Part shown: one piece after another, positions 11,002 through 17,589 of the stretch
Position numbering within the stretch: position 1 is the stretch's first letter
Layout: each line of letters opens with the position of its first letter
Virus record (IMG/VR): IMGVR_UViG_3300036766_000988
Location: 124,001 to 188,000 of that record
Strand: one strand, 5' to 3'
DNA length: 64,000 nucleotides
Made by a program: the position numbers and the translations under genes
Notes under the pieces: model-generated
The model's database searches: none
The model's input: only the letters and a program-made list of their open reading frames with translations
What the model was told of the DNA's origin: nothing

Positions 11002-11874
11002 CTAGAGGAAGGCGCGGATGCAGATCCGCTTCTTGGCCGGAGTCAGGCTGGACTTGTTGATCGCCTCGGTGAGCGTGTAGCCGTCCGTGAGGAGCGTGAA
11101 GATCTCCTTCTGGGCCGACTCGTCGACACCCTTGGACGAGAGCTTGTCGAGAGCCCTCGACAAGGCGACCTGAGCCTCGATGCGCGTCTCGGCGACGTCA
11201 TCGCGGATCGTGTCCTCCCAGTAGTTGTTGTAGCCGCCCGCTGCCGTGTGGAACTGCGGGACGTTGTCCCCAAGAAGGTTCTTGCCGGGCATGGAATCCC
11301 CCGTGCGATCCTTCCACTTGCGCGAGCGGGTACGGCAGAAGTTCGCGAAATGATGGCGAACGCTGGTCCCGAGGTAGTTGAGAAACTGGTACGGCGTTGC
11401 CTTCGGAGCCGAGATCGTGATCTCCCCCTGATCCTTCCACTTCATCTCGTCGTTCCGCGTGGACAGCTCGACGATATCCTCACCACGGTAGGTGGCCTTC
11501 GGCGACGCATAGCCACCCGTGATCGGATCCGGCATCCACTTGCAGATGACCCGAGCGCCGTCCTTCTTCTTCCCCTGCTTGTGCCCCTTGCGGTAGCTCC
11601 ACTGACGAGATCGCCACTGCGTGAAGCGGATGCCGCCGAGGAACGCGCAGGCTTCGAGAGCCGTCATGGTCTCCGGAACAGAGCACGAGACGCGCTCGTG
11701 GAACTTCTCGATCACCTGCGCCTGGAGAAGCTTCTCCCACACATCCTGGCAAGCGTCTTCGAAGTTGGTGACGACCGTGTTCAGCTTGCGAATCTCGTTC
11801 GCAACGAACGGAGCGAAATCCCGGTACAGCTCGGTGTTGTCGCGGGGAATACCCGGACGCACGCGCATCGTCAT
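11002..11874 (-). CDS. ECF-like RNA polymerase sigma factor with internal insertion
   Basis: Region 2-like FAPFVANEIRKL..NFEDACQDVWEKL and FLNYLGTSVRHHFANFCR; region 4-like EIFTLLTDGYTLTEAI; start codon uncertain. Confidence 0.6.
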   Translation of the reverse strand: MTMRVRPGIPRDNTELYRDFAPFVANEIRKLNTVVTNFEDACQDVWEKLLQAQVIEKFHERVSCSVPETMTALEACAFLGGIRFTQWRSRQWSYRKGHKQGKKKDGARVICKWMPDPITGGYASPKATYRGEDIVELSTRNDEMKWKDQGEITISAPKATPYQFLNYLGTSVRHHFANFCRTRSRKWKDRTGDSMPGKNLLGDNVPQFHTAAGGYNNYWEDTIRDDVAETRIEAQVALSRALDKLSSKGVDESAQKEIFTLLTDGYTLTEAINKSSLTPAKKRICIRAFL

Positions 11875-12215
11875 GATGATCGTCCTCTCTCGTAGGTTGA
11901 GGCTACTACGCGGGCGACCCATGCCGTTCAGCCGCCCCCGTACCCAAAACGCCGTGCCCAGCTTTTTGGGAGCCCACTTCGTACCGCTTTCCTGATCTTC
12001 CTGTCAACCTCTACGGAGACGAAAGTAGTAAAAATTAAGGCAGTCCCGTATAGGAACTTTCCTGTGGGCTACGTACCGGTACTTCCTCTCTAGCTGGACT
12101 GTACGTTAGGGTTGAACCTGAGCGATTCCCGGTGTATGGGTGTCGATGTCTCTCGTGCCTCCTTCGGCGATCCCGCTGTCGAAGTGAGTCGTGCCAAGGC
12201 GGGGGCCGCTCCTTC

Positions 12216-12844: not shown

Positions 12845-13285
12845 TCACTTCGGGAGGTTCACCCGGGGCGTCGAACGGACCATCTCGACGTAGTTCGAGA
12901 GCACCGCCTTCTGGGCGGGGTTCAACCTGGGAAGCTTGCTTTCGTAATCGGCTGCGATGTCGATCATGACAACGGGCCTTTTCACGAAGAGGCTGTGGAA
13001 GACCTCGGGAGGCAACGAAGTCTCCAAGCTGGCGAGGTTCATCCCCTTCTTGGCCGTCGGAACGGGCTTCACGCCCACGATCGTGGCCACCCCGAGGTTG
13101 CCCTCGATCTCCACGGAGTTCTCCCCCGAGAGCGCCTGTCGAGCCACCCCCTCAGCACGGAGGTGGGGCTTCACAGCTTCCAGCTCCTGGGTGAGCTGCA
13201 CGATCTCTCGGTGGGTTTCGATGGCGAAGTCGACCACCGAGGCCAGATTCCCTGAAGCCAAGACGTCCTTGGAGGACTTGAGCAT
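12845..13285 (-). CDS. hypothetical protein
   Basis: GC3-rich ORF starting MLKSS with a GGAG-type SD-like sequence upstream. Confidence 0.55.
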   Translation of the reverse strand: MLKSSKDVLASGNLASVVDFAIETHREIVQLTQELEAVKPHLRAEGVARQALSGENSVEIEGNLGVATIVGVKPVPTAKKGMNLASLETSLPPEVFHSLFVKRPVVMIDIAADYESKLPRLNPAQKAVLSNYVEMVRSTPRVNLPK

Positions 13286-13439
13286 CGTTCTCTCCTGCCA
13301 GGAGACGATCCGCTCGATGGTCGAGCTTGGATGGCCTACAAGGCTTCGAGCCCACTCTACACGGGATCTTCGTCGAGGACAAACCCGCCACATCTGAGGC
13401 GCTTCGGCTACCGCTTTTTGCGTCTCTTACCTGGCCTTT

Positions 13440-14040
13440 TGCAGCAGCTCTCGTTCGAGCTGTCGTACTTCCGCTACCTTACACAGCAGCTCTAGATGGA
13501 CTCAGAGTTGCTCTGCTCGGATCCCGACCGTCTGCCGTACATGCCGTACGAAGACTCGCTCTGGTTGTTGCTACTCTACGTGCCATCACTGCTGTCGCTA
13601 CTGCTGTGCCGCTTGAGAAACCACTCGAAGCAGAGCTTCTCGTGAGAATCTTTGAACAGAGAATGGGGTCTCAGGTTTCACTCAGTATCTTCTTCAAGGA
13701 GTGATCCAAGGAGAAGAGTGAAGGATCAGATAGTTTCGGGATGATCCTTCTGCGAGCTACTTCGAAGCCTCTCAGGGGATCCCGACCCTTGAGAGGCTCT
13801 TCCTCGATGTGCAGCTTGAAGTGGCCTTCCTCCAAGCGAGAGATCGAGGTCCGTTGGCAGGTTCTTCCGAGGAAGAGGCTCTCCTGCCACCTGAGCAGTT
13901 GGATTTTTCAGCAGCTTGGGTCCTCGAAGGAAAACCTGAGCTGGCTGTCCCTCCAAAGAGGGTACGGAACCTGGTAACCGTTGGCTGAGCCTCGGAGGGG
14001 ATACACCTCGGTTCCGGGCTTCGCAAGGAAGAAAGAAGAG
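13440..14040 (+). ncRNA. candidate large structured non-coding RNA
   Basis: At least nine complementary stems in ~600 nt with no credible CDS; G-T wobble pairs are compatible only on the plus strand. Confidence 0.55.
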
Positions 14041-14107
14041 ACCGAAAGAACGCGTCTCATAAGGGATTTCTCAAGCGCAGAATCTTCGATGAAAGCGCTC
14101 TAGTAAG

Positions 14108-14440
14108 ATGAAAATGAACCCCGCTACCCTCGTCGAGATGAGCGATGTCGTTGGCCGTCCGAAGGTGAAGATGACGCTCCCTGTTCCTTTGCGGATCGGA
14201 GACCGCATTCACCTGGCGTTTCAGCTTCGTCGTGTAAACGGAGGCCGGTCCGAAGTCTTGGACATCTCAGGGGACTTCCGAATCACAGCCGTCTCGTTCG
14301 ACGCCTCCAACGGCCCCACCCGGCAGATCCTCGCGGTCGAAAGCGCTGGGAAAGCTCCCACCTGGCGTGCCGTGAAGACGGTCCCGGCTCCTGAGCGCAA
14401 GCTCGGGCCGACCCGCTTCCCGCGCACCTCTGTCGTATGA
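14108..14440 (+). CDS. hypothetical beta-rich protein
   Basis: 110 aa ORF coupled to the next ORF (ATGA overlap). Confidence 0.6.
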   Translation: MKMNPATLVEMSDVVGRPKVKMTLPVPLRIGDRIHLAFQLRRVNGGRSEVLDISGDFRITAVSFDASNGPTRQILAVESAGKAPTWRAVKTVPAPERKLGPTRFPRTSVV

Positions 14441-14709
14441 CGTCGGCACTTCCCGAGGCCATTTGGATTCCCGGGCGGAGTCCGTCGGTCTACGTCGGCA
14501 CGCCTTTCGAGATGGTGCGGTCGATGGCCGCCGAGATGGGCGAAGACGTGACGGTACGGGATGCCGTGGAGCTGCTGCTCCACGCGCTGGCCGAGAACCG
14601 ACGCCTCATCATCGGCCTTCCAGCCAACGTGCCGGTGGAAGACCTCACCCGGCTATTCGTCACGGCCTTGCTCGACACAGGGCTCGCCAAGACGATGGCC
14701 GCCGCCTAG
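14437..14709 (+). CDS. hypothetical protein
   Basis: 90 aa ORF, start overlaps the upstream stop. Confidence 0.55.
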   Translation: MTSALPEAIWIPGRSPSVYVGTPFEMVRSMAAEMGEDVTVRDAVELLLHALAENRRLIIGLPANVPVEDLTRLFVTALLDTGLAKTMAAA

Positions 14710-15166: not shown

Positions 15167-15892
15167 ATGGATCGTCTCGCCCAGCGGGTGTTGACCCGCT
15201 TCATGACCCGGGTGGCCTTCGAAAAGGGCCTGGTCTCCTTCGGGATCAAGGATCTCGAACAGCTTTCGAAGATGGGGCGCCAGTTCGCGGTCATCTCCGC
15301 CTACCGGCCGCCGGATGAGCACGGCAAGCACGAGAACAAGCAACGCCACGGGGACTTGATGGCTGACCTCCAGCGCATGGGGTACCGCAAGTTCGAGACG
15401 CTCCGCAGCTCCTGGGAGGACATGGCCTCGGGCACCCGCCACGGTGAGCGCTCTATCCTGGTTCCCGGGATGAGCTTCAAGGACGCTACCCACCTGATGA
15501 AGAAGTACAACCAGGACGGGATCCTCTACAAAGATCCCTCCGGGTCGGTCGGCATCTACAAGAAGGACGGCAAGGCCGAGATGGCGTACGACCCCAAGAC
15601 CGGCGATCCCGCCATCTCGAAGGCGCTCGACAAGAGCGAGTACTCGAAGGGCCGTTCGATGAGCTTCGGCCTCCAGCTCGTCGAGGGAGAGATCCCCTGG
15701 TCCGACGGGCCGGTCACCGGCGAGCAGATCAAGAAGCACGTCGAGGCTACGGCCGCGAAAGCAGAGAAAAAGACGCCCAAGGAGTCCCCCAAAGAGGAAG
15801 CTCCCGAATCCTCGAAGTGGTGGGAATCCCAGACCCCCGCCTTCAAGCGGAAGTACATCGAAGAGCACCCGCAGAGCGTGTACGCGCCTTAA
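15167..15892 (+). CDS. DUF3293-like phage protein
   Basis: FAVISAYR...ENKQR..DL..MGY...ERSILV....KKYNQDGIL pattern. Confidence 0.5.
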   Translation: MDRLAQRVLTRFMTRVAFEKGLVSFGIKDLEQLSKMGRQFAVISAYRPPDEHGKHENKQRHGDLMADLQRMGYRKFETLRSSWEDMASGTRHGERSILVPGMSFKDATHLMKKYNQDGILYKDPSGSVGIYKKDGKAEMAYDPKTGDPAISKALDKSEYSKGRSMSFGLQLVEGEIPWSDGPVTGEQIKKHVEATAAKAEKKTPKESPKEEAPESSKWWESQTPAFKRKYIEEHPQSVYAP

Positions 15893-16644: not shown

Positions 16645-17589
16645 ATGCGCAAAGTCCTCTTACAAGGAATCTACCAGATTCGGAACACTACCAACGGGCA
16701 CTCCTACATCGGAAGCTCAGTCAACATTCACAGCCGATGGTCCGGGCACAAGTGCGACTTACGACGGGGCACCCACGACAACCCCATCGTGCAGGCGGCT
16801 TGGTTGAAGTATGGGGAAGACGCCTTCGAATGGCTCGTGCTTGAGACCGTAGAAAACAGGCTGAAGCTGCTTGAGCGTGAAGCTCAACACATGCTCGTTC
16901 TGAAACCCGAGTACAACCTGTCAAACCCCAACGAAGAGACCCTTAACATCGGACATCCCATGTCTGATGAGGCAAAGGCTCGAATCAGCAAGGCCAATAA
17001 GGGACGGAAGCGCACTGAAAAGACCCGCGACTTGATGAGTCGGCTCGCGAAGGTTCGAGGCATGCCTCAAGAAGCACAGGCACGTCAACGAGAGGCGGTG
17101 ACAGGAAGGCATCGTTCTCCCGAAGTGCGGGCGAAGATTGCTGCATCGCATCTCGGGATACGTCCTTCGGAAGAAACGAAGGCGAAGATCAGTCAAGCGT
17201 TGACGGGACAACCTGGTCGAAAGCACTCAGAAGAAGCTAAAGCTAAAATCGGTGCTGGTCGGAGGGGGAAGAAGCACACCCCAGAATCTCGGGCAAAGAT
17301 GTCAGAAGCACACAAAGGACATGAAGTCACCCCCATACATCGGGCCAACATGTCTGCTGGACAGAGGGGTCGAAAACACTCTGAAGAAACGAAAGCCAAA
17401 ATCGGAACTGGGCGAAAGGGAAAACGACACACGGCCGGGGCCAAAGCCAAGATCGCGGCTGCTCGACGTGCCCGATCTACCAGCGGTGTCGCTGCTGTTG
17501 CGCTCGTTGAGCAAGCAGAGTGTCTCGCTGCCAGGAATCCATCCATCCATCCGACGTCTTGTACTGGCCGAACCGACGATGCAGCTTGA
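16645..17589 (+). CDS. GIY-YIG homing endonuclease with NUMOD3 repeats
   Basis: GIYQIRNTTNGHSYIGSS...RW..H...KYGEDAFEWLVLE; repeated KHSEExKAKI / KHTPESRAKMS. Confidence 0.92.
   Translation: MRKVLLQGIYQIRNTTNGHSYIGSSVNIHSRWSGHKCDLRRGTHDNPIVQAAWLKYGEDAFEWLVLETVENRLKLLEREAQHMLVLKPEYNLSNPNEETLNIGHPMSDEAKARISKANKGRKRTEKTRDLMSRLAKVRGMPQEAQARQREAVTGRHRSPEVRAKIAASHLGIRPSEETKAKISQALTGQPGRKHSEEAKAKIGAGRRGKKHTPESRAKMSEAHKGHEVTPIHRANMSAGQRGRKHSEETKAKIGTGRKGKRHTAGAKAKIAAARRARSTSGVAAVALVEQAECLAARNPSIHPTSCTGRTDDAA

What the first reader, a model, noticed from the sequence alone, without database searches (positions are those of the whole stretch)
13400..14107. ~600-700 nt densely base-paired non-coding region: candidate large structured RNA
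Seen: no credible CDS between two divergent gene blocks, yet stems are stacked end to end: CAGCTC/GAGCTG (13445..13462), GCAGCTCT/AGAGTTGC (13486..13511), GAAGGATCA/TGATCCTTC (13720..13750), AGCCTCTCA/TGAGAGGCT (13766..13798), CCTCGAT/ATCGAGG enclosing GCTTG/CAAGC (13802..13849), GGCAGG/CCTGCC (13856..13888), CAGCTTGGGT/ACCTGAGCTG (13912..13943), CCCTC-CAAA-GAGGG (13949..13962), GGAACC/GGTTCC (13966..14015), and a GCAA-capped hairpin near 14020..14034. The G-T pairs work as wobbles only on the plus strand, which points to an RNA rather than a DNA structure. Established: large phages carry big ncRNAs of unknown function (for example the GOLLD and ROOL classes). I found no RNase P, tmRNA or group I/II hallmark motifs, so it may be a new class.
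Basis: partly seen in the sequence, partly recalled or inferred. Interest (0 to 1): 0.75.

Follow-up and report, generated by a model that had tools for sequence, protein, structure and literature searches.

The report
New structured RNA in jumbo phages
The gap between two divergent genes of this large uncultivated phage holds a roughly 320-base element whose base-paired fold is conserved by compensatory mutations in at least 17 related phages and matches no known RNA family, so it is very probably a new structured non-coding RNA of unknown function.

Summary
The stems at 13680-13962 are real and conserved. Those at 13400-13650 are no better than chance.

- **Conservation:** The window lies in a 252-kb virus record. 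Relatives from sediment, freshwater and mat metagenomes all keep a 570-1260 nt gap between homologs of the same two small genes.
- **Not coding:** No frame is kept between relatives, and no frame has the genome's codon usage.
- **Fold:** The conserved part is 13660-13991 and has two domains. The 5' domain has three to four hairpins. The second domain has five hairpins closed by a long-range helix (13889-13895 with 13670-13676).
- **Covariation:** 40 of 56 modelled pairs show double compensatory changes. A structure model built from one clade finds the other clade at E 4e-12 to 3e-6. A sequence-only model misses five of those eight sequences.
- **Known families:** No Rfam family, tRNA or tmRNA matches.
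- **Strand:** The minus-sense model wins 8 of 8 comparisons. UUCG, GAAA and CUUG loops and a conserved promoter-like element point the same way.
- **Function:** Unknown. My best guess is a stand-alone regulatory or RNP RNA, possibly with a conformational switch.

It is a new RNA family and deserves experimental follow-up.

The parts
14021..14026 (-). -35-like TTGCGA of the promoter-like element P_x that reads into the structured region
   Evidence: cTTGY sits at a fixed distance from GGTGTA in 14 relatives while the spacer sequence varies.
13998..14007 (-). Extended -10-like GGTGTATCCC of P_x. The inferred transcript start is near 13991.
   Evidence: Conserved in relatives. GGTGTA is enriched in intergenic DNA of the genome, 88 copies against 41 expected. 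About two dozen copies lie 15-22 nt before the first start codon of a same-strand ORF. The start site is an inference.
13660..13991 (-). Conserved structured RNA candidate: 5' domain plus closed five-hairpin domain
   Evidence: MFE z = -4.07. Model R1 matches 13658-13916 on the minus strand at E 4e-12.
13965..13980 (-). Hairpin A1: a 3-bp stem (NGG/CCN', closing pair covaries C-G, A-U, G-C) with a conserved 10-nt loop UUACCAGGUU
   Evidence: Loop positions 5-10 are complementary to 13672-13677, which overlaps the 3' strand of the closing helix.
13949..13962 (-). Hairpin H2, CCCUC-UUUG-GAGGG, with UUCG or CUCG loops in relatives
   Evidence: Six pairs with CG/UA exchanges.
13909..13947 (-). Long hairpin H3
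   Evidence: Predicted in both clades by alignment folding. Its sequence differs between clades.
13896..13908 (-). Conserved A-rich linker GAAAAAUCCAACUG
   Evidence: Near-invariant columns.
13889..13895 (-). 5' strand of the closing helix P (CUCAGGU)
   Evidence: Pairs 7 of 7 with 13670-13676. The helix is kept 7 of 7 in 16 of 17 relatives through eight different sequence pairs.
13856..13888 (-). H4: outer stem GGCAGG/CCUGCC, an internal loop, and inner stem UCUUCC/GGAAGA
   Evidence: All six outer pairs have double changes (helix 3).
13802..13849 (-). H5, an extended hairpin that is shorter in clade 2
   Evidence: Helix 4: 10 of 11 pairs with double changes. It is rich in U.G pairs on this strand.
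13766..13798 (-). H6, with the conserved apical loop UCGGGAUC
   Evidence: Helices 5 and 6, where all 13 pairs have double changes. The loop GGGAU/C is near invariant.
13751..13765 (-). Conserved junction containing AGUAG
   Evidence: Conserved in all clades.
13720..13750 (-). H7, GAAGGAUCA/UGAUCCUUC
   Evidence: Helix 8: five of seven pairs with double changes.
13688..13717 (-). H8, a hairpin capped by UUCG, GAAA or CUUG in relatives
   Evidence: It is only partly captured by the model (helix 9).
13670..13676 (-). 3' strand of the closing helix P (ACCUGAG)
13400..13659 (-). Variable tail: low-complexity sequence with three-base periodicity, 160-750 nt long in relatives, with tandem arrays in L021 and L023
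   Evidence: Periodicity. There is no start codon in the open Ser/Thr/Ala frame. Strain-level indels are all multiples of three. Folding z = -0.75.
13354..13365 (-). Promoter-like element P_A (CCCGUGUAGAGU) about 70 nt before gene A
   Evidence: The same cTTG...GGTGTA pattern is conserved in relatives.
13312..13326 (-). Conserved hairpin GCUCGA-nnn-UCGAGC in the 5' UTR of gene A
   Evidence: Compensatory variants CTCTA/TAGAG, CTCAA/TTGAG and GTCCGA/TCGGAC occur in relatives.
13291..13305 (-). Hairpin UCUCC-UGGCA-GGAGA that sequesters the Shine-Dalgarno of gene A
   Evidence: Kept in relatives, with the variant CUCCC/GGGAG in L016.
12845..13288 (-). Gene A (147 aa, unknown function), always downstream of the element on the same strand
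   Evidence: Homologs. Synteny. No Pfam, PHROG or fold match.
14108..14440 (+). Gene B (110 aa, unknown function), divergent from the element
   Evidence: Homologs. Synteny.
14054..14063 (+). -10-like GUCUCAUAAG for gene B. In clade 2 the same place reads GGTGTAGAG.

Best explanation
The gap holds a new family of structured non-coding RNA specific to one clade of uncultivated, roughly 60% G+C jumbo phages.

Inferred transcription:
- It is transcribed leftward, on the window's minus strand.
- The promoter is a conserved sigma-70-like element, TTGCGA-17 nt-TATCCC preceded by GGTG. It stands back to back with the promoter of gene B.
- The transcript starts near 13991.

Shown fold, about 320 nt:
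- A 5' domain holds a variable hairpin, a 3-bp hairpin with a conserved 10-nt loop, a YNMG-capped hairpin and a long hairpin.
- An A-rich linker follows.
- A second domain holds five hairpins (H4-H8) closed by the long-range helix CUCAGGU/ACCUGAG.
- Conserved unpaired motifs are the loop CGGGAUC and the junction AGUAG.
- Selection acts on base pairing, not on any reading frame.

Function is inferred, not shown. I think it acts as an RNA in its own right, as a regulator or as the RNA part of a particle with the always-adjacent small proteins A and/or B.

The 10-nt loop and the 5' strand of the closing helix are both complementary to the same 3' segment. The RNA may therefore toggle between two conformations.

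The variable, triplet-periodic tail and gene A lie downstream with no recognisable terminator, so read-through into A is possible.
For: - **Conserved place and size:** The gap sits between A and B homologs in more than 17 distinct relatives, down to 37% identity of A.
- **Not coding:**
- **Alignment folding of clade 2:** 56 pairs, 26 with double changes.
- **Family-wide counts:** 86.6% of cells are paired against 67.8% when shuffled and 38-53% when slid. 40 of 56 pairs have double changes, and 0 of 500 shuffles reach any of the measures.
- **Structure model R1 from clade 2:** It finds eight sequences that were not used to build it, full length, at 23-41 bits. The sequence-only model R2 finds three of them, at 11.6-25.3 bits.
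- **Closing helix:** Kept 7 of 7 in 16 of 17 relatives through eight sequence variants.
- **Distant relatives:** The same architecture is readable in L027 and L031.
- **Folding energy:** z = -4.07 for 13660-13991, and the MFE fold reproduces the comparative helices.
- **Strand, models:** R1 (minus sense) beats R3 (plus sense) in 8 of 8 sequences outside the seed alignment.
- **Strand, alignment folding:** -58.1 against -45.4 kcal/mol.
- **Strand, wobble pairs:** G.U against A.C is 47:11 in seed sequences and 35:19 in the others.
- **Strand, loops:** UUCG, GAAA and CUUG tetraloops occur only on this strand.
- **Promoter:** P_x has this orientation and is conserved. GGTGTA behaves as a promoter element genome-wide.
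- **No known family:**
Against: - Transcription is not shown.
- The only hint of RNA is one 153-nt contig on 13891-14039 in a library only guessed to be RNA. It reaches about 48 nt upstream of my predicted start, which does not fit a minus-strand start at 13991.
- Single-sequence folding energies slightly favour the plus strand, by a mean of 3.7 kcal/mol with p = 0.02.
- In helices predicted on both strands, G.U and A.C are equal at 9 and 9.
- No terminator or defined 3' end was found.
- The covariation counts come from an alignment fitted to the model, which leans towards the structure.
- The relatives form a few clades, so the number of independent changes is smaller than the cell counts suggest.
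- Function is a guess. Proteins A and B have no recognisable domains or fold relatives.
- More distant A homologs exist without any gap.
Confidence: 0.5

Rival explanations
1. It is a cis-acting structured 5' leader of gene A. Transcription from P_x runs through the structure and the variable tail into A, and the fold, perhaps through its alternative pairings, tunes A expression.
For: - It lies on the same strand as A in every relative.
- No terminator lies in between.
- The proximal UTR of A is itself structured, with a hairpin that sequesters the Shine-Dalgarno.
- A possible conformational switch exists.
Against: - A has its own conserved promoter-like element about 70 nt upstream.
- The spacer between the fold and A is hypervariable in sequence, 160-750 nt long and poorly folding. 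That is unlike any known expression platform.
- A homologs in other clades do without the element.
Confidence: 0.17
2. It is a replication origin of the ColE1 or T4 type. The structured transcript from P_x extends into the purine-rich repetitive tail, forms a persistent RNA-DNA hybrid there, and primes DNA synthesis.
For: - Genes diverge locally at this point.
- G+C is lower than in the flanks, 51-57% against 60-65%.
- The tail is repetitive and, in L021 and L023, consists of tandem arrays that vary between strains, like iterons.
- The tail is purine-rich on the transcript strand.
- The locus sits among early-type genes such as ArdC, SAM lyase and methyltransferases.
Against: - The cumulative GC-skew extremum of the contig is at about 102 kb, not here at 137 kb.
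- There is no AT-rich unwinding element.
- The repeats are not conserved as defined iterons across relatives.
- No replication initiator is recognisable next to it.
- Nothing here tests R-loop formation.
Confidence: 0.12
3. The functional strand is plus. The element would then be an RNA, or a long leader, transcribed towards gene B.
For: - Single-sequence MFE is on average 3.7 kcal/mol lower on the plus strand.
- In the window, H3 has two G.U pairs only on plus.
- The contig of the possible RNA run spans 13891-14039, across my predicted minus-strand start.
Against: - The plus-sense model R3 scores lower than R1 in 8 of 8 sequences outside the seed alignment.
- Alignment folding is 12.7 kcal/mol worse on plus.
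- G.U exceeds A.C on minus.
- Stable tetraloops read correctly only on minus.
- B has its own promoter-like element within 50 nt of its start, and no such element reads rightward from the A end.
Confidence: 0.1
4. The element works as DNA. It could be a single-strand structure used in replication or packaging, or a set of palindromic protein-binding sites between divergent promoters.
For: - Most helices are Watson-Crick and fold about equally on both strands.
- GATC-containing palindromes are frequent in some relatives.
- The element lies between divergent promoters.
Against: - Long-range nested helices with compensatory changes and a multi-branch architecture are not expected of operators.
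- The strand asymmetry in models and wobble pairs favours one strand.
- GATC enrichment is not conserved across relatives.
Confidence: 0.06
5. Part of the gap is protein-coding after all. The tail would encode a Ser/Thr/Ala-rich low-complexity peptide, or the gap would be a decayed gene.
For: - Three-base periodicity is strong.
- One frame is nearly free of stops in almost all relatives.
- All strain-level indels are multiples of three.
Against: - Five of the 14 relatives examined have no ATG, GTG or TTG anywhere in that open frame, and only three have one near its start.
- G+C at the third codon position is about 0.3-0.45, against about 0.8 in real genes of these genomes.
- Codon-usage scores are not coding-like.
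- Triplet-unit slippage alone would give multiples of three.
- The structured core has no conserved frame.
Confidence: 0.04

Closest known systems
GOLLD and ROOL (large structured non-coding RNAs, often phage- or prophage-encoded, function unknown)
   Same: It is a large, multi-helix, covariation-supported RNA encoded by phages, with no known biochemical function and no coding capacity.
   Different: There is no sequence or structure match to either Rfam model in the window or in 14 relatives, even at E up to 10 for the window. It is smaller, about 320 nt against about 580-800 nt. It sits in a different host range of high-G+C environmental jumbo phages, and in fixed synteny with two small proteins.
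ColE1 RNA II and phage T4 origin transcripts (structured primer RNAs)
   Same: A promoter drives a structured RNA of several hundred nucleotides. A stretch follows that could stay hybridised to DNA, and the element lies in an early region.
   Different: No homology was found. No RNA I-type antisense partner, origin signature or skew extremum is present here. R-loop formation was not tested.
Riboswitch-like or leader RNAs with alternative pairings
   Same: Two upstream segments, the hairpin A1 loop and the 5' strand of helix P, compete for one 3' segment. A downstream gene lies on the same strand.
   Different: It is far larger than known aptamers. No expression platform lies next to the regulated gene, and a 160-750 nt hypervariable spacer and a second promoter-like element intervene.
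phi29 pRNA and other phage RNP RNAs
   Same: It is a phage-encoded structured RNA read from an early-type promoter that might work with phage proteins.
   Different: No similarity was found. It is three times longer and has no link to packaging genes.

Membership tests
Any Rfam 15 family (including GOLLD, ROOL, HEARO, OLE, raiA, 6S, RNase P, group I and II introns, riboswitches) | A match to the family covariance model at or near its gathering score | tested here: not met
   The window has no matches at gathering thresholds. For 13000-14500 at E up to 10, only chance-level miRNA and snoRNA hits of 19 bits or less appear. The 14 relatives have no matches.
tmRNA or tRNA-like | A tRNA-like domain with acceptor and T arms, and for tmRNA a tag reading frame with a resume codon | tested here: not met
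   ARAGORN finds nothing in the window or in L001. The open frame without a start codon in the tail is 55-170 codons long and low-complexity, unlike a tag.
Structured non-coding RNA (generic) | Base pairs maintained by compensatory substitutions in homologs | tested here: met
   40 of 56 pairs have double changes. 86.6% of cells are paired against 67.8% shuffled and 38-53% slid. The closing helix is kept through eight sequence variants.
Structured non-coding RNA (generic) | Structure adds detectable information beyond sequence | tested here: met
   R1 with structure scores 23-41 bits on eight sequences outside the seed alignment. R2 without structure finds three of them, at 11.6-25.3 bits.
Structured non-coding RNA (generic) | Absence of coding signal | tested here: met
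   Codon log-likelihood, frames not conserved, and few or no start codons.
Structured non-coding RNA (generic) | A transcript of defined strand and ends | tested here: inconclusive
   There is one 153-nt contig in a library only guessed to be RNA, without strand information. The promoter is inferred. No terminator was found.
Replication origin with primer RNA | GC-skew switch, AT-rich unwinding element, defined iterons, adjacent initiator | tested here: not met
   The skew extremum is at about 102 kb of the contig, not at 137 kb. The lowest local G+C is 51%. Repeats are not conserved as iterons. The neighbours have no recognisable initiator domains.
CsrB/RsmZ-type protein sponge | Many hairpin loops presenting GGA | tested here: inconclusive
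   One invariant GGGAU/C loop occurs in H6, with further GGA in stems and junctions. The number in loops is small and differs between clades. No statistical test was made.
Retron, OMEGA or CRISPR-type guide RNAs | An adjacent reverse transcriptase, IscB/TnpB or Cas gene | tested here: not met
   The neighbouring genes have no such Pfam domains in the window or in relatives.

The most novel reading that the evidence does not exclude
This is a previously undescribed class of large, complex-fold RNA confined to a clade of environmental jumbo phages. It would act as a catalytic or protein-scaffolding RNA, or as a conformational switch that governs an early phage module (proteins A and B), rather than as a simple leader or origin.
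Probability: 0.45. Interest if true: 0.8.

Novelty: new variant of a known kind. Interest (0 to 1): 0.68.

Why it matters
Large RNAs with intricate conserved folds are rare. The few known ones either turned out to have important biochemistry (ribozymes, RNP cores) or remain unsolved puzzles (GOLLD, ROOL, OLE).

This element adds a well-supported new family from jumbo phages, a group whose early biology is almost unknown. It comes with a precise fold model, a probable promoter, a candidate switch and two always-linked small proteins. Together these make it directly testable: in vitro transcription and probing, co-expression with A and B, and structure determination.

The same analysis also yields a promoter motif (GGTGTA) for this phage group, which helps to annotate their transcription units.

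Tried and rejected
- **Stop-codon recoding.** I checked whether the gap hides a gene read with TAG as sense. One minus frame has six TAG and no other stops. TAG, however, ends a third of long ORFs, and the frame scores badly. Rejected.
- **Relatives from single flanking proteins.** Searching IMG/VR gave nothing.
- **GenBank phages.** blastn found nothing.
- **Conserved 21-mer pattern.** It gave only chance hits in IMG/VR and in GTDB genomes.
- **Further copies in the same genome.** None.
- **GATC clustering as a DNA-level signal.** It is present in some relatives and absent in others. Rejected as a conserved feature.
- **Tail repeats as extra copies of the 5' strand of helix P.** Their sequence does not follow the helix variant. 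Rejected.
- **A conserved frame through the core.** None exists.
- **Protein A structure.** The model from a deeper alignment was good, with pLDDT 93, but Foldseek found no informative relative in the PDB or AlphaFold clusters.
- **RNA evidence.** One low-share run gave one contig, which is inconclusive.
- **Canonical signals.** No sigma-70 promoter or intrinsic terminator was found by the simple scan.
- **Tertiary partners.** I looked by eye for partners of the AGUAG junction and the CGGGAUC loop and found nothing convincing.
Full report
**Setting**

The window is bases 124001-188000 of a 252-kb linear IMG/VR virus record with 59.5% G+C, estimated 53% complete. It is therefore a jumbo phage.

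The finding lies between two divergent genes.
- Gene A is on the minus strand. Its ORF runs 12845-13393, but the likely start is ATG 13288, after a GGAGAG Shine-Dalgarno.
- Gene B runs 14108-14440 on the plus strand.
- The real gap is therefore about 13289-14107, 819 nt.
- Its G+C is 51-57%, against 60-65% in the flanks.

**Is it non-coding?**

Yes, on several grounds.
- A codon-usage log-likelihood trained on 93 long ORFs of the genome gives +13 to +23 bits per 150 nt in gene A. It hovers at or below zero in all six frames of the gap.
- One minus frame carries six TAG and no other stop. TAG, however, terminates 32 of 93 long ORFs, so recoding is excluded.
- Stop-to-stop pieces of the gap were compared between relatives. 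Similarity appears in every frame, and the matching frame changes from relative to relative. That is the signature of nucleotide-level, not protein-level, conservation.

**Relatives**

- Single-protein scans of IMG/VR and blastn against GenBank phages found nothing.
- Protein searches found homologs of A and of B. Their contigs come from sediment, freshwater and microbial-mat assemblies, some 118-350 kb long. One is an NCBI assembly, GCA_902730345.1.
- In every contig that carries both genes they are divergent and separated by 570-1260 nt. This holds even where A is only 37-42% identical.
- Two more distant A homologs, L024 and L026, have no gap. The module is therefore specific to one clade.
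- I ended with 17 distinct gap sequences, plus a partial one (L042) that the structure model also finds. The main groups are clade 1 (window, L003, L017, L038, L002, L015) and clade 2 (L004, L009, L016, L019, L021, L041, L046). L027, L031, L045 and L044 are outliers.

**Anatomy, read on the window's minus strand**

The multiple alignment shows the following order.
- A conserved promoter-like element.
- A conserved core of about 320 nt.
- A hypervariable tail.
- A second promoter-like element.
- A conserved structured 5' UTR of gene A.

Alignment folding first revealed a long-range helix between two near-invariant motifs, YUCARGU and RCYUGAR.
- In the window these are 13889-13895 and 13670-13676.
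- The helix is kept 7 of 7 in 16 of 17 sequences, through eight different sequence pairs. Examples are CUCAGGU/ACCUGAG, CUCGGGU/ACCCGAG, UUCAAGU/GCUUGAA and CCUAGGC/GCUUGGG.
- It encloses five hairpins, H4-H8, with a conserved apical loop CGGGAUC in H6 and a conserved junction AGUAG.

Upstream of this helix lie four elements.
- A variable hairpin.
- A 3-bp hairpin with a conserved 10-nt loop, whose closing pair covaries C-G, A-U and G-C.
- A hairpin capped by UUCG, CUCG or UUUG.
- A long hairpin, followed by an A-rich linker.

**Strength of the structural evidence**

- Folding the clade-2 alignment gives 56 pairs, 26 with double compensatory changes.
- A covariance model built from those seven sequences (R1) finds eight sequences it was not built from. 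These are clade 1, L045 and L042. Matches are full length, at 23-41 bits and E 4e-12 to 3e-6, always on the strand of gene A.
- A model of the same alignment without base pairs (R2) finds only three of the eight, at 11.6-25.3 bits. Conserved pairing therefore carries much of the signal.
- On the 15-sequence model alignment, 86.6% of cells form standard pairs. Shuffled partners give 67.8%, and partners slid by 1-3 columns give 38-53%.
- 40 of 56 pairs have double changes, and no shuffle of 500 reaches any of the five measures.
- Caveats: that alignment was fitted to the model, and the sequences fall into few clades.
- L027 and L031 are too distant for R1, but show the same order of helices and motifs when folded with only the closing helix imposed.
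- For the window alone, 13660-13991 on the minus strand folds at -133 kcal/mol with z = -4.07, and the MFE reproduces the comparative helices.
- The 260-nt tail has z = -0.75.

**Known families**

- Rfam 15 gives nothing at gathering thresholds in the window or in 14 relatives. Only chance-level hits appear at E up to 10.
- ARAGORN finds no tRNA or tmRNA.
- R1 finds a single copy in the phage's own genome.
- It finds no true match among 80 loci of bacterial and archaeal genomes seeded with a conserved pattern.
- A literature search turned up no description of such an element.

**Which strand?**

In the window's model helices G.U and A.C are 3 and 3.

Evidence for minus:
- Alignment folding gives -58.1 kcal/mol on minus against -45.4 on plus.
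- G.U exceeds A.C by 47:11 in seed sequences and 35:19 in the others.
- Hairpin H5 and the extension of the closing helix exist only with U.G pairs on minus.
- UUCG, GAAA and CUUG tetraloops with their usual C-G closing pairs appear only on minus.
- A plus-sense model built in the same way (R3) scores lower than R1 on all eight sequences outside the seed alignment. For the window the scores are 14.8 against 41.2 bits.

Evidence against minus:
- Single-sequence MFEs favour plus by 3.7 kcal/mol on average.
- Helices predicted on both strands have equal G.U and A.C counts.

I put minus at about 80%.

**Promoters**

- A motif cTTGY, a variable spacer, then GGTGTA is conserved just upstream of the core in 14 relatives, oriented to read into it. 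In the window it is 14026 to 13998 on the minus strand.
- A second copy lies about 70 nt before gene A.
- A third, on the other strand, lies 30-50 nt before gene B. In clade 1 it is degenerate and reads YCTAYAAG.
- In the 252-kb genome GGTGTA is twice as frequent in intergenic DNA as expected, 88 against 41.
- About two dozen copies lie exactly 15-22 nt before the first start codon of a same-strand ORF. That fits an extended -10 element (GGTG-TAnnnn) serving many nearly leaderless genes.
- For P_x, the -35-like TTGCGA is 17 nt from TATCCC.
- These are inferences. The simple sigma-70 scan finds nothing, and no intrinsic terminator is present.

**Expression data**

- DNA runs of sediment metagenomes hold the sequence.
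- One library guessed to be RNA holds a single 153-nt contig on 13891-14039 and nothing of the flanking genes.
- That contig has no strand and may be contaminating DNA. It also crosses my predicted start. I count it as inconclusive and mildly against a start at 13991.

**A possible switch**

- Positions 5-10 of the conserved 10-nt loop (window 13965-13980 hairpin) are complementary to the segment ARCYUG. That segment overlaps the 3' strand of the closing helix.
- The match is 5-6 of 6 positions in 14 of the 15 sequences that have the hairpin, and 4 of 6 in L044.
- One position changes U-A, U.G and C-G in step between clades.
- The two pairings are mutually exclusive, and the window's MFE uses a variant of the alternative.
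- This is suggestive only, because it rests on one covarying position.

**The tail (13400-13659)**

- It has a strong three-base periodicity: purine at position 1, G or C at position 2, A or T at position 3. This leaves one frame, Ser/Thr/Ala-rich, nearly free of stops in almost all relatives.
- All indels between near-identical strains are multiples of three: 3, 9, 12, 30, 30, 36 and 84.
- However, five of the 14 relatives examined have no start codon anywhere in that frame, and only three have one near its start.
- G+C at the third position is 0.3-0.45, against about 0.8 in real genes.
- The codon score is poor.
- I regard it as non-coding triplet-repeat-like sequence and leave its periodicity unexplained.

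**Function**

- Proteins A and B have no Pfam or PHROG match.
- A good AlphaFold model of A, pLDDT 93, has no informative structural relative.
- The cumulative GC-skew extremum of the contig is about 35 kb away, which weakens the origin idea.
- GATC clustering in the core is not conserved.
- The repeats of the tail do not follow the closing-helix variant.
- I therefore commit, at moderate confidence, to a stand-alone structured RNA made early from P_x. It would act as a regulator or as the RNA partner of A and/or B.
- A cis-acting leader of A, a primer RNA of an origin, and a plus-strand RNA remain as rivals.

**Verdict**

This is a real, conserved, structured non-coding element and a new family. 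Its function is unknown.

Noticed in passing
Whole genome (G000). In the window, for example 3460 (-), 36190 (+), 46552 (+), 47174 (+) and 58455 (-).: GGTGTA is twice as frequent in intergenic DNA as expected. About two dozen copies lie exactly 15-22 nt before the first start codon of a same-strand ORF. This suggests an extended -10 promoter element and many nearly leaderless genes, or else an unusual translation signal.
   Followed up: partly
window 13291-13326 (-): The 5' UTR of gene A has two conserved hairpins. One pairs UCUCC with the GGAGA Shine-Dalgarno. Compensatory variants occur in relatives, so translation of A is probably regulated.
   Followed up: partly
window 13400-13659; L021:2250-3000 and L023:1620-2481: The tail is triplet-periodic and low-complexity. 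L021 and L023 carry long tandem arrays, pyrimidine-rich then purine-rich, that differ between near-identical strains only by multiples of three bases. One frame is open but lacks a start codon. The cause of the periodicity is unexplained.
   Followed up: partly
window 13891-14039: A library guessed to be RNA (X6) contains one 153-nt contig, 95-99% identical, covering only this part of the gap and none of the flanking genes.
   Followed up: partly
window 16645-17589 (+): This ORF encodes a GIY-YIG plus NUMOD3 homing-endonuclease-like protein in a stretch of lower G+C. GIY-YIG genes also recur near the locus in relatives. I did not check for an intron or for free-standing insertion.
   Followed up: no
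window 15167-15892 (+): A protein with weak matches to S-adenosylmethionine lyase and DUF3293. Relatives carry ArdC-N, dCTP deaminase and N6/N4 methyltransferases nearby. This looks like an early anti-restriction region.
   Followed up: no
window 11002-11922 (-): A 306-aa protein with a sub-threshold match to sigma-70 region 2. In relatives (L046-L048) a 552-571 aa protein at a similar place has a faint match to the same domain. This may be a phage sigma factor.
   Followed up: no
L004:5457-5648 and other relatives' cores: GATC, mostly as GGATC, is strongly enriched in the core of some relatives, for example 7 copies in 192 nt in L004. It is not enriched in L019, L002, L021 or L041. The genome as a whole is GATC-rich at 7.8 per kb. 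The densest 250-nt stretch is at genome position 168851, which is window 44851.
   Followed up: partly
clade-2 loci, e.g. L004:5519-5535 and L004:5633-5645: In clade 2 the apical part of H5 (CUCCGAGAGG) is complementary to the junction CCUCUCCGA before the 3' strand of helix P. This is a possible pseudoknot. Both segments are invariant within the clade, so there is no covariation to test it.
   Followed up: no
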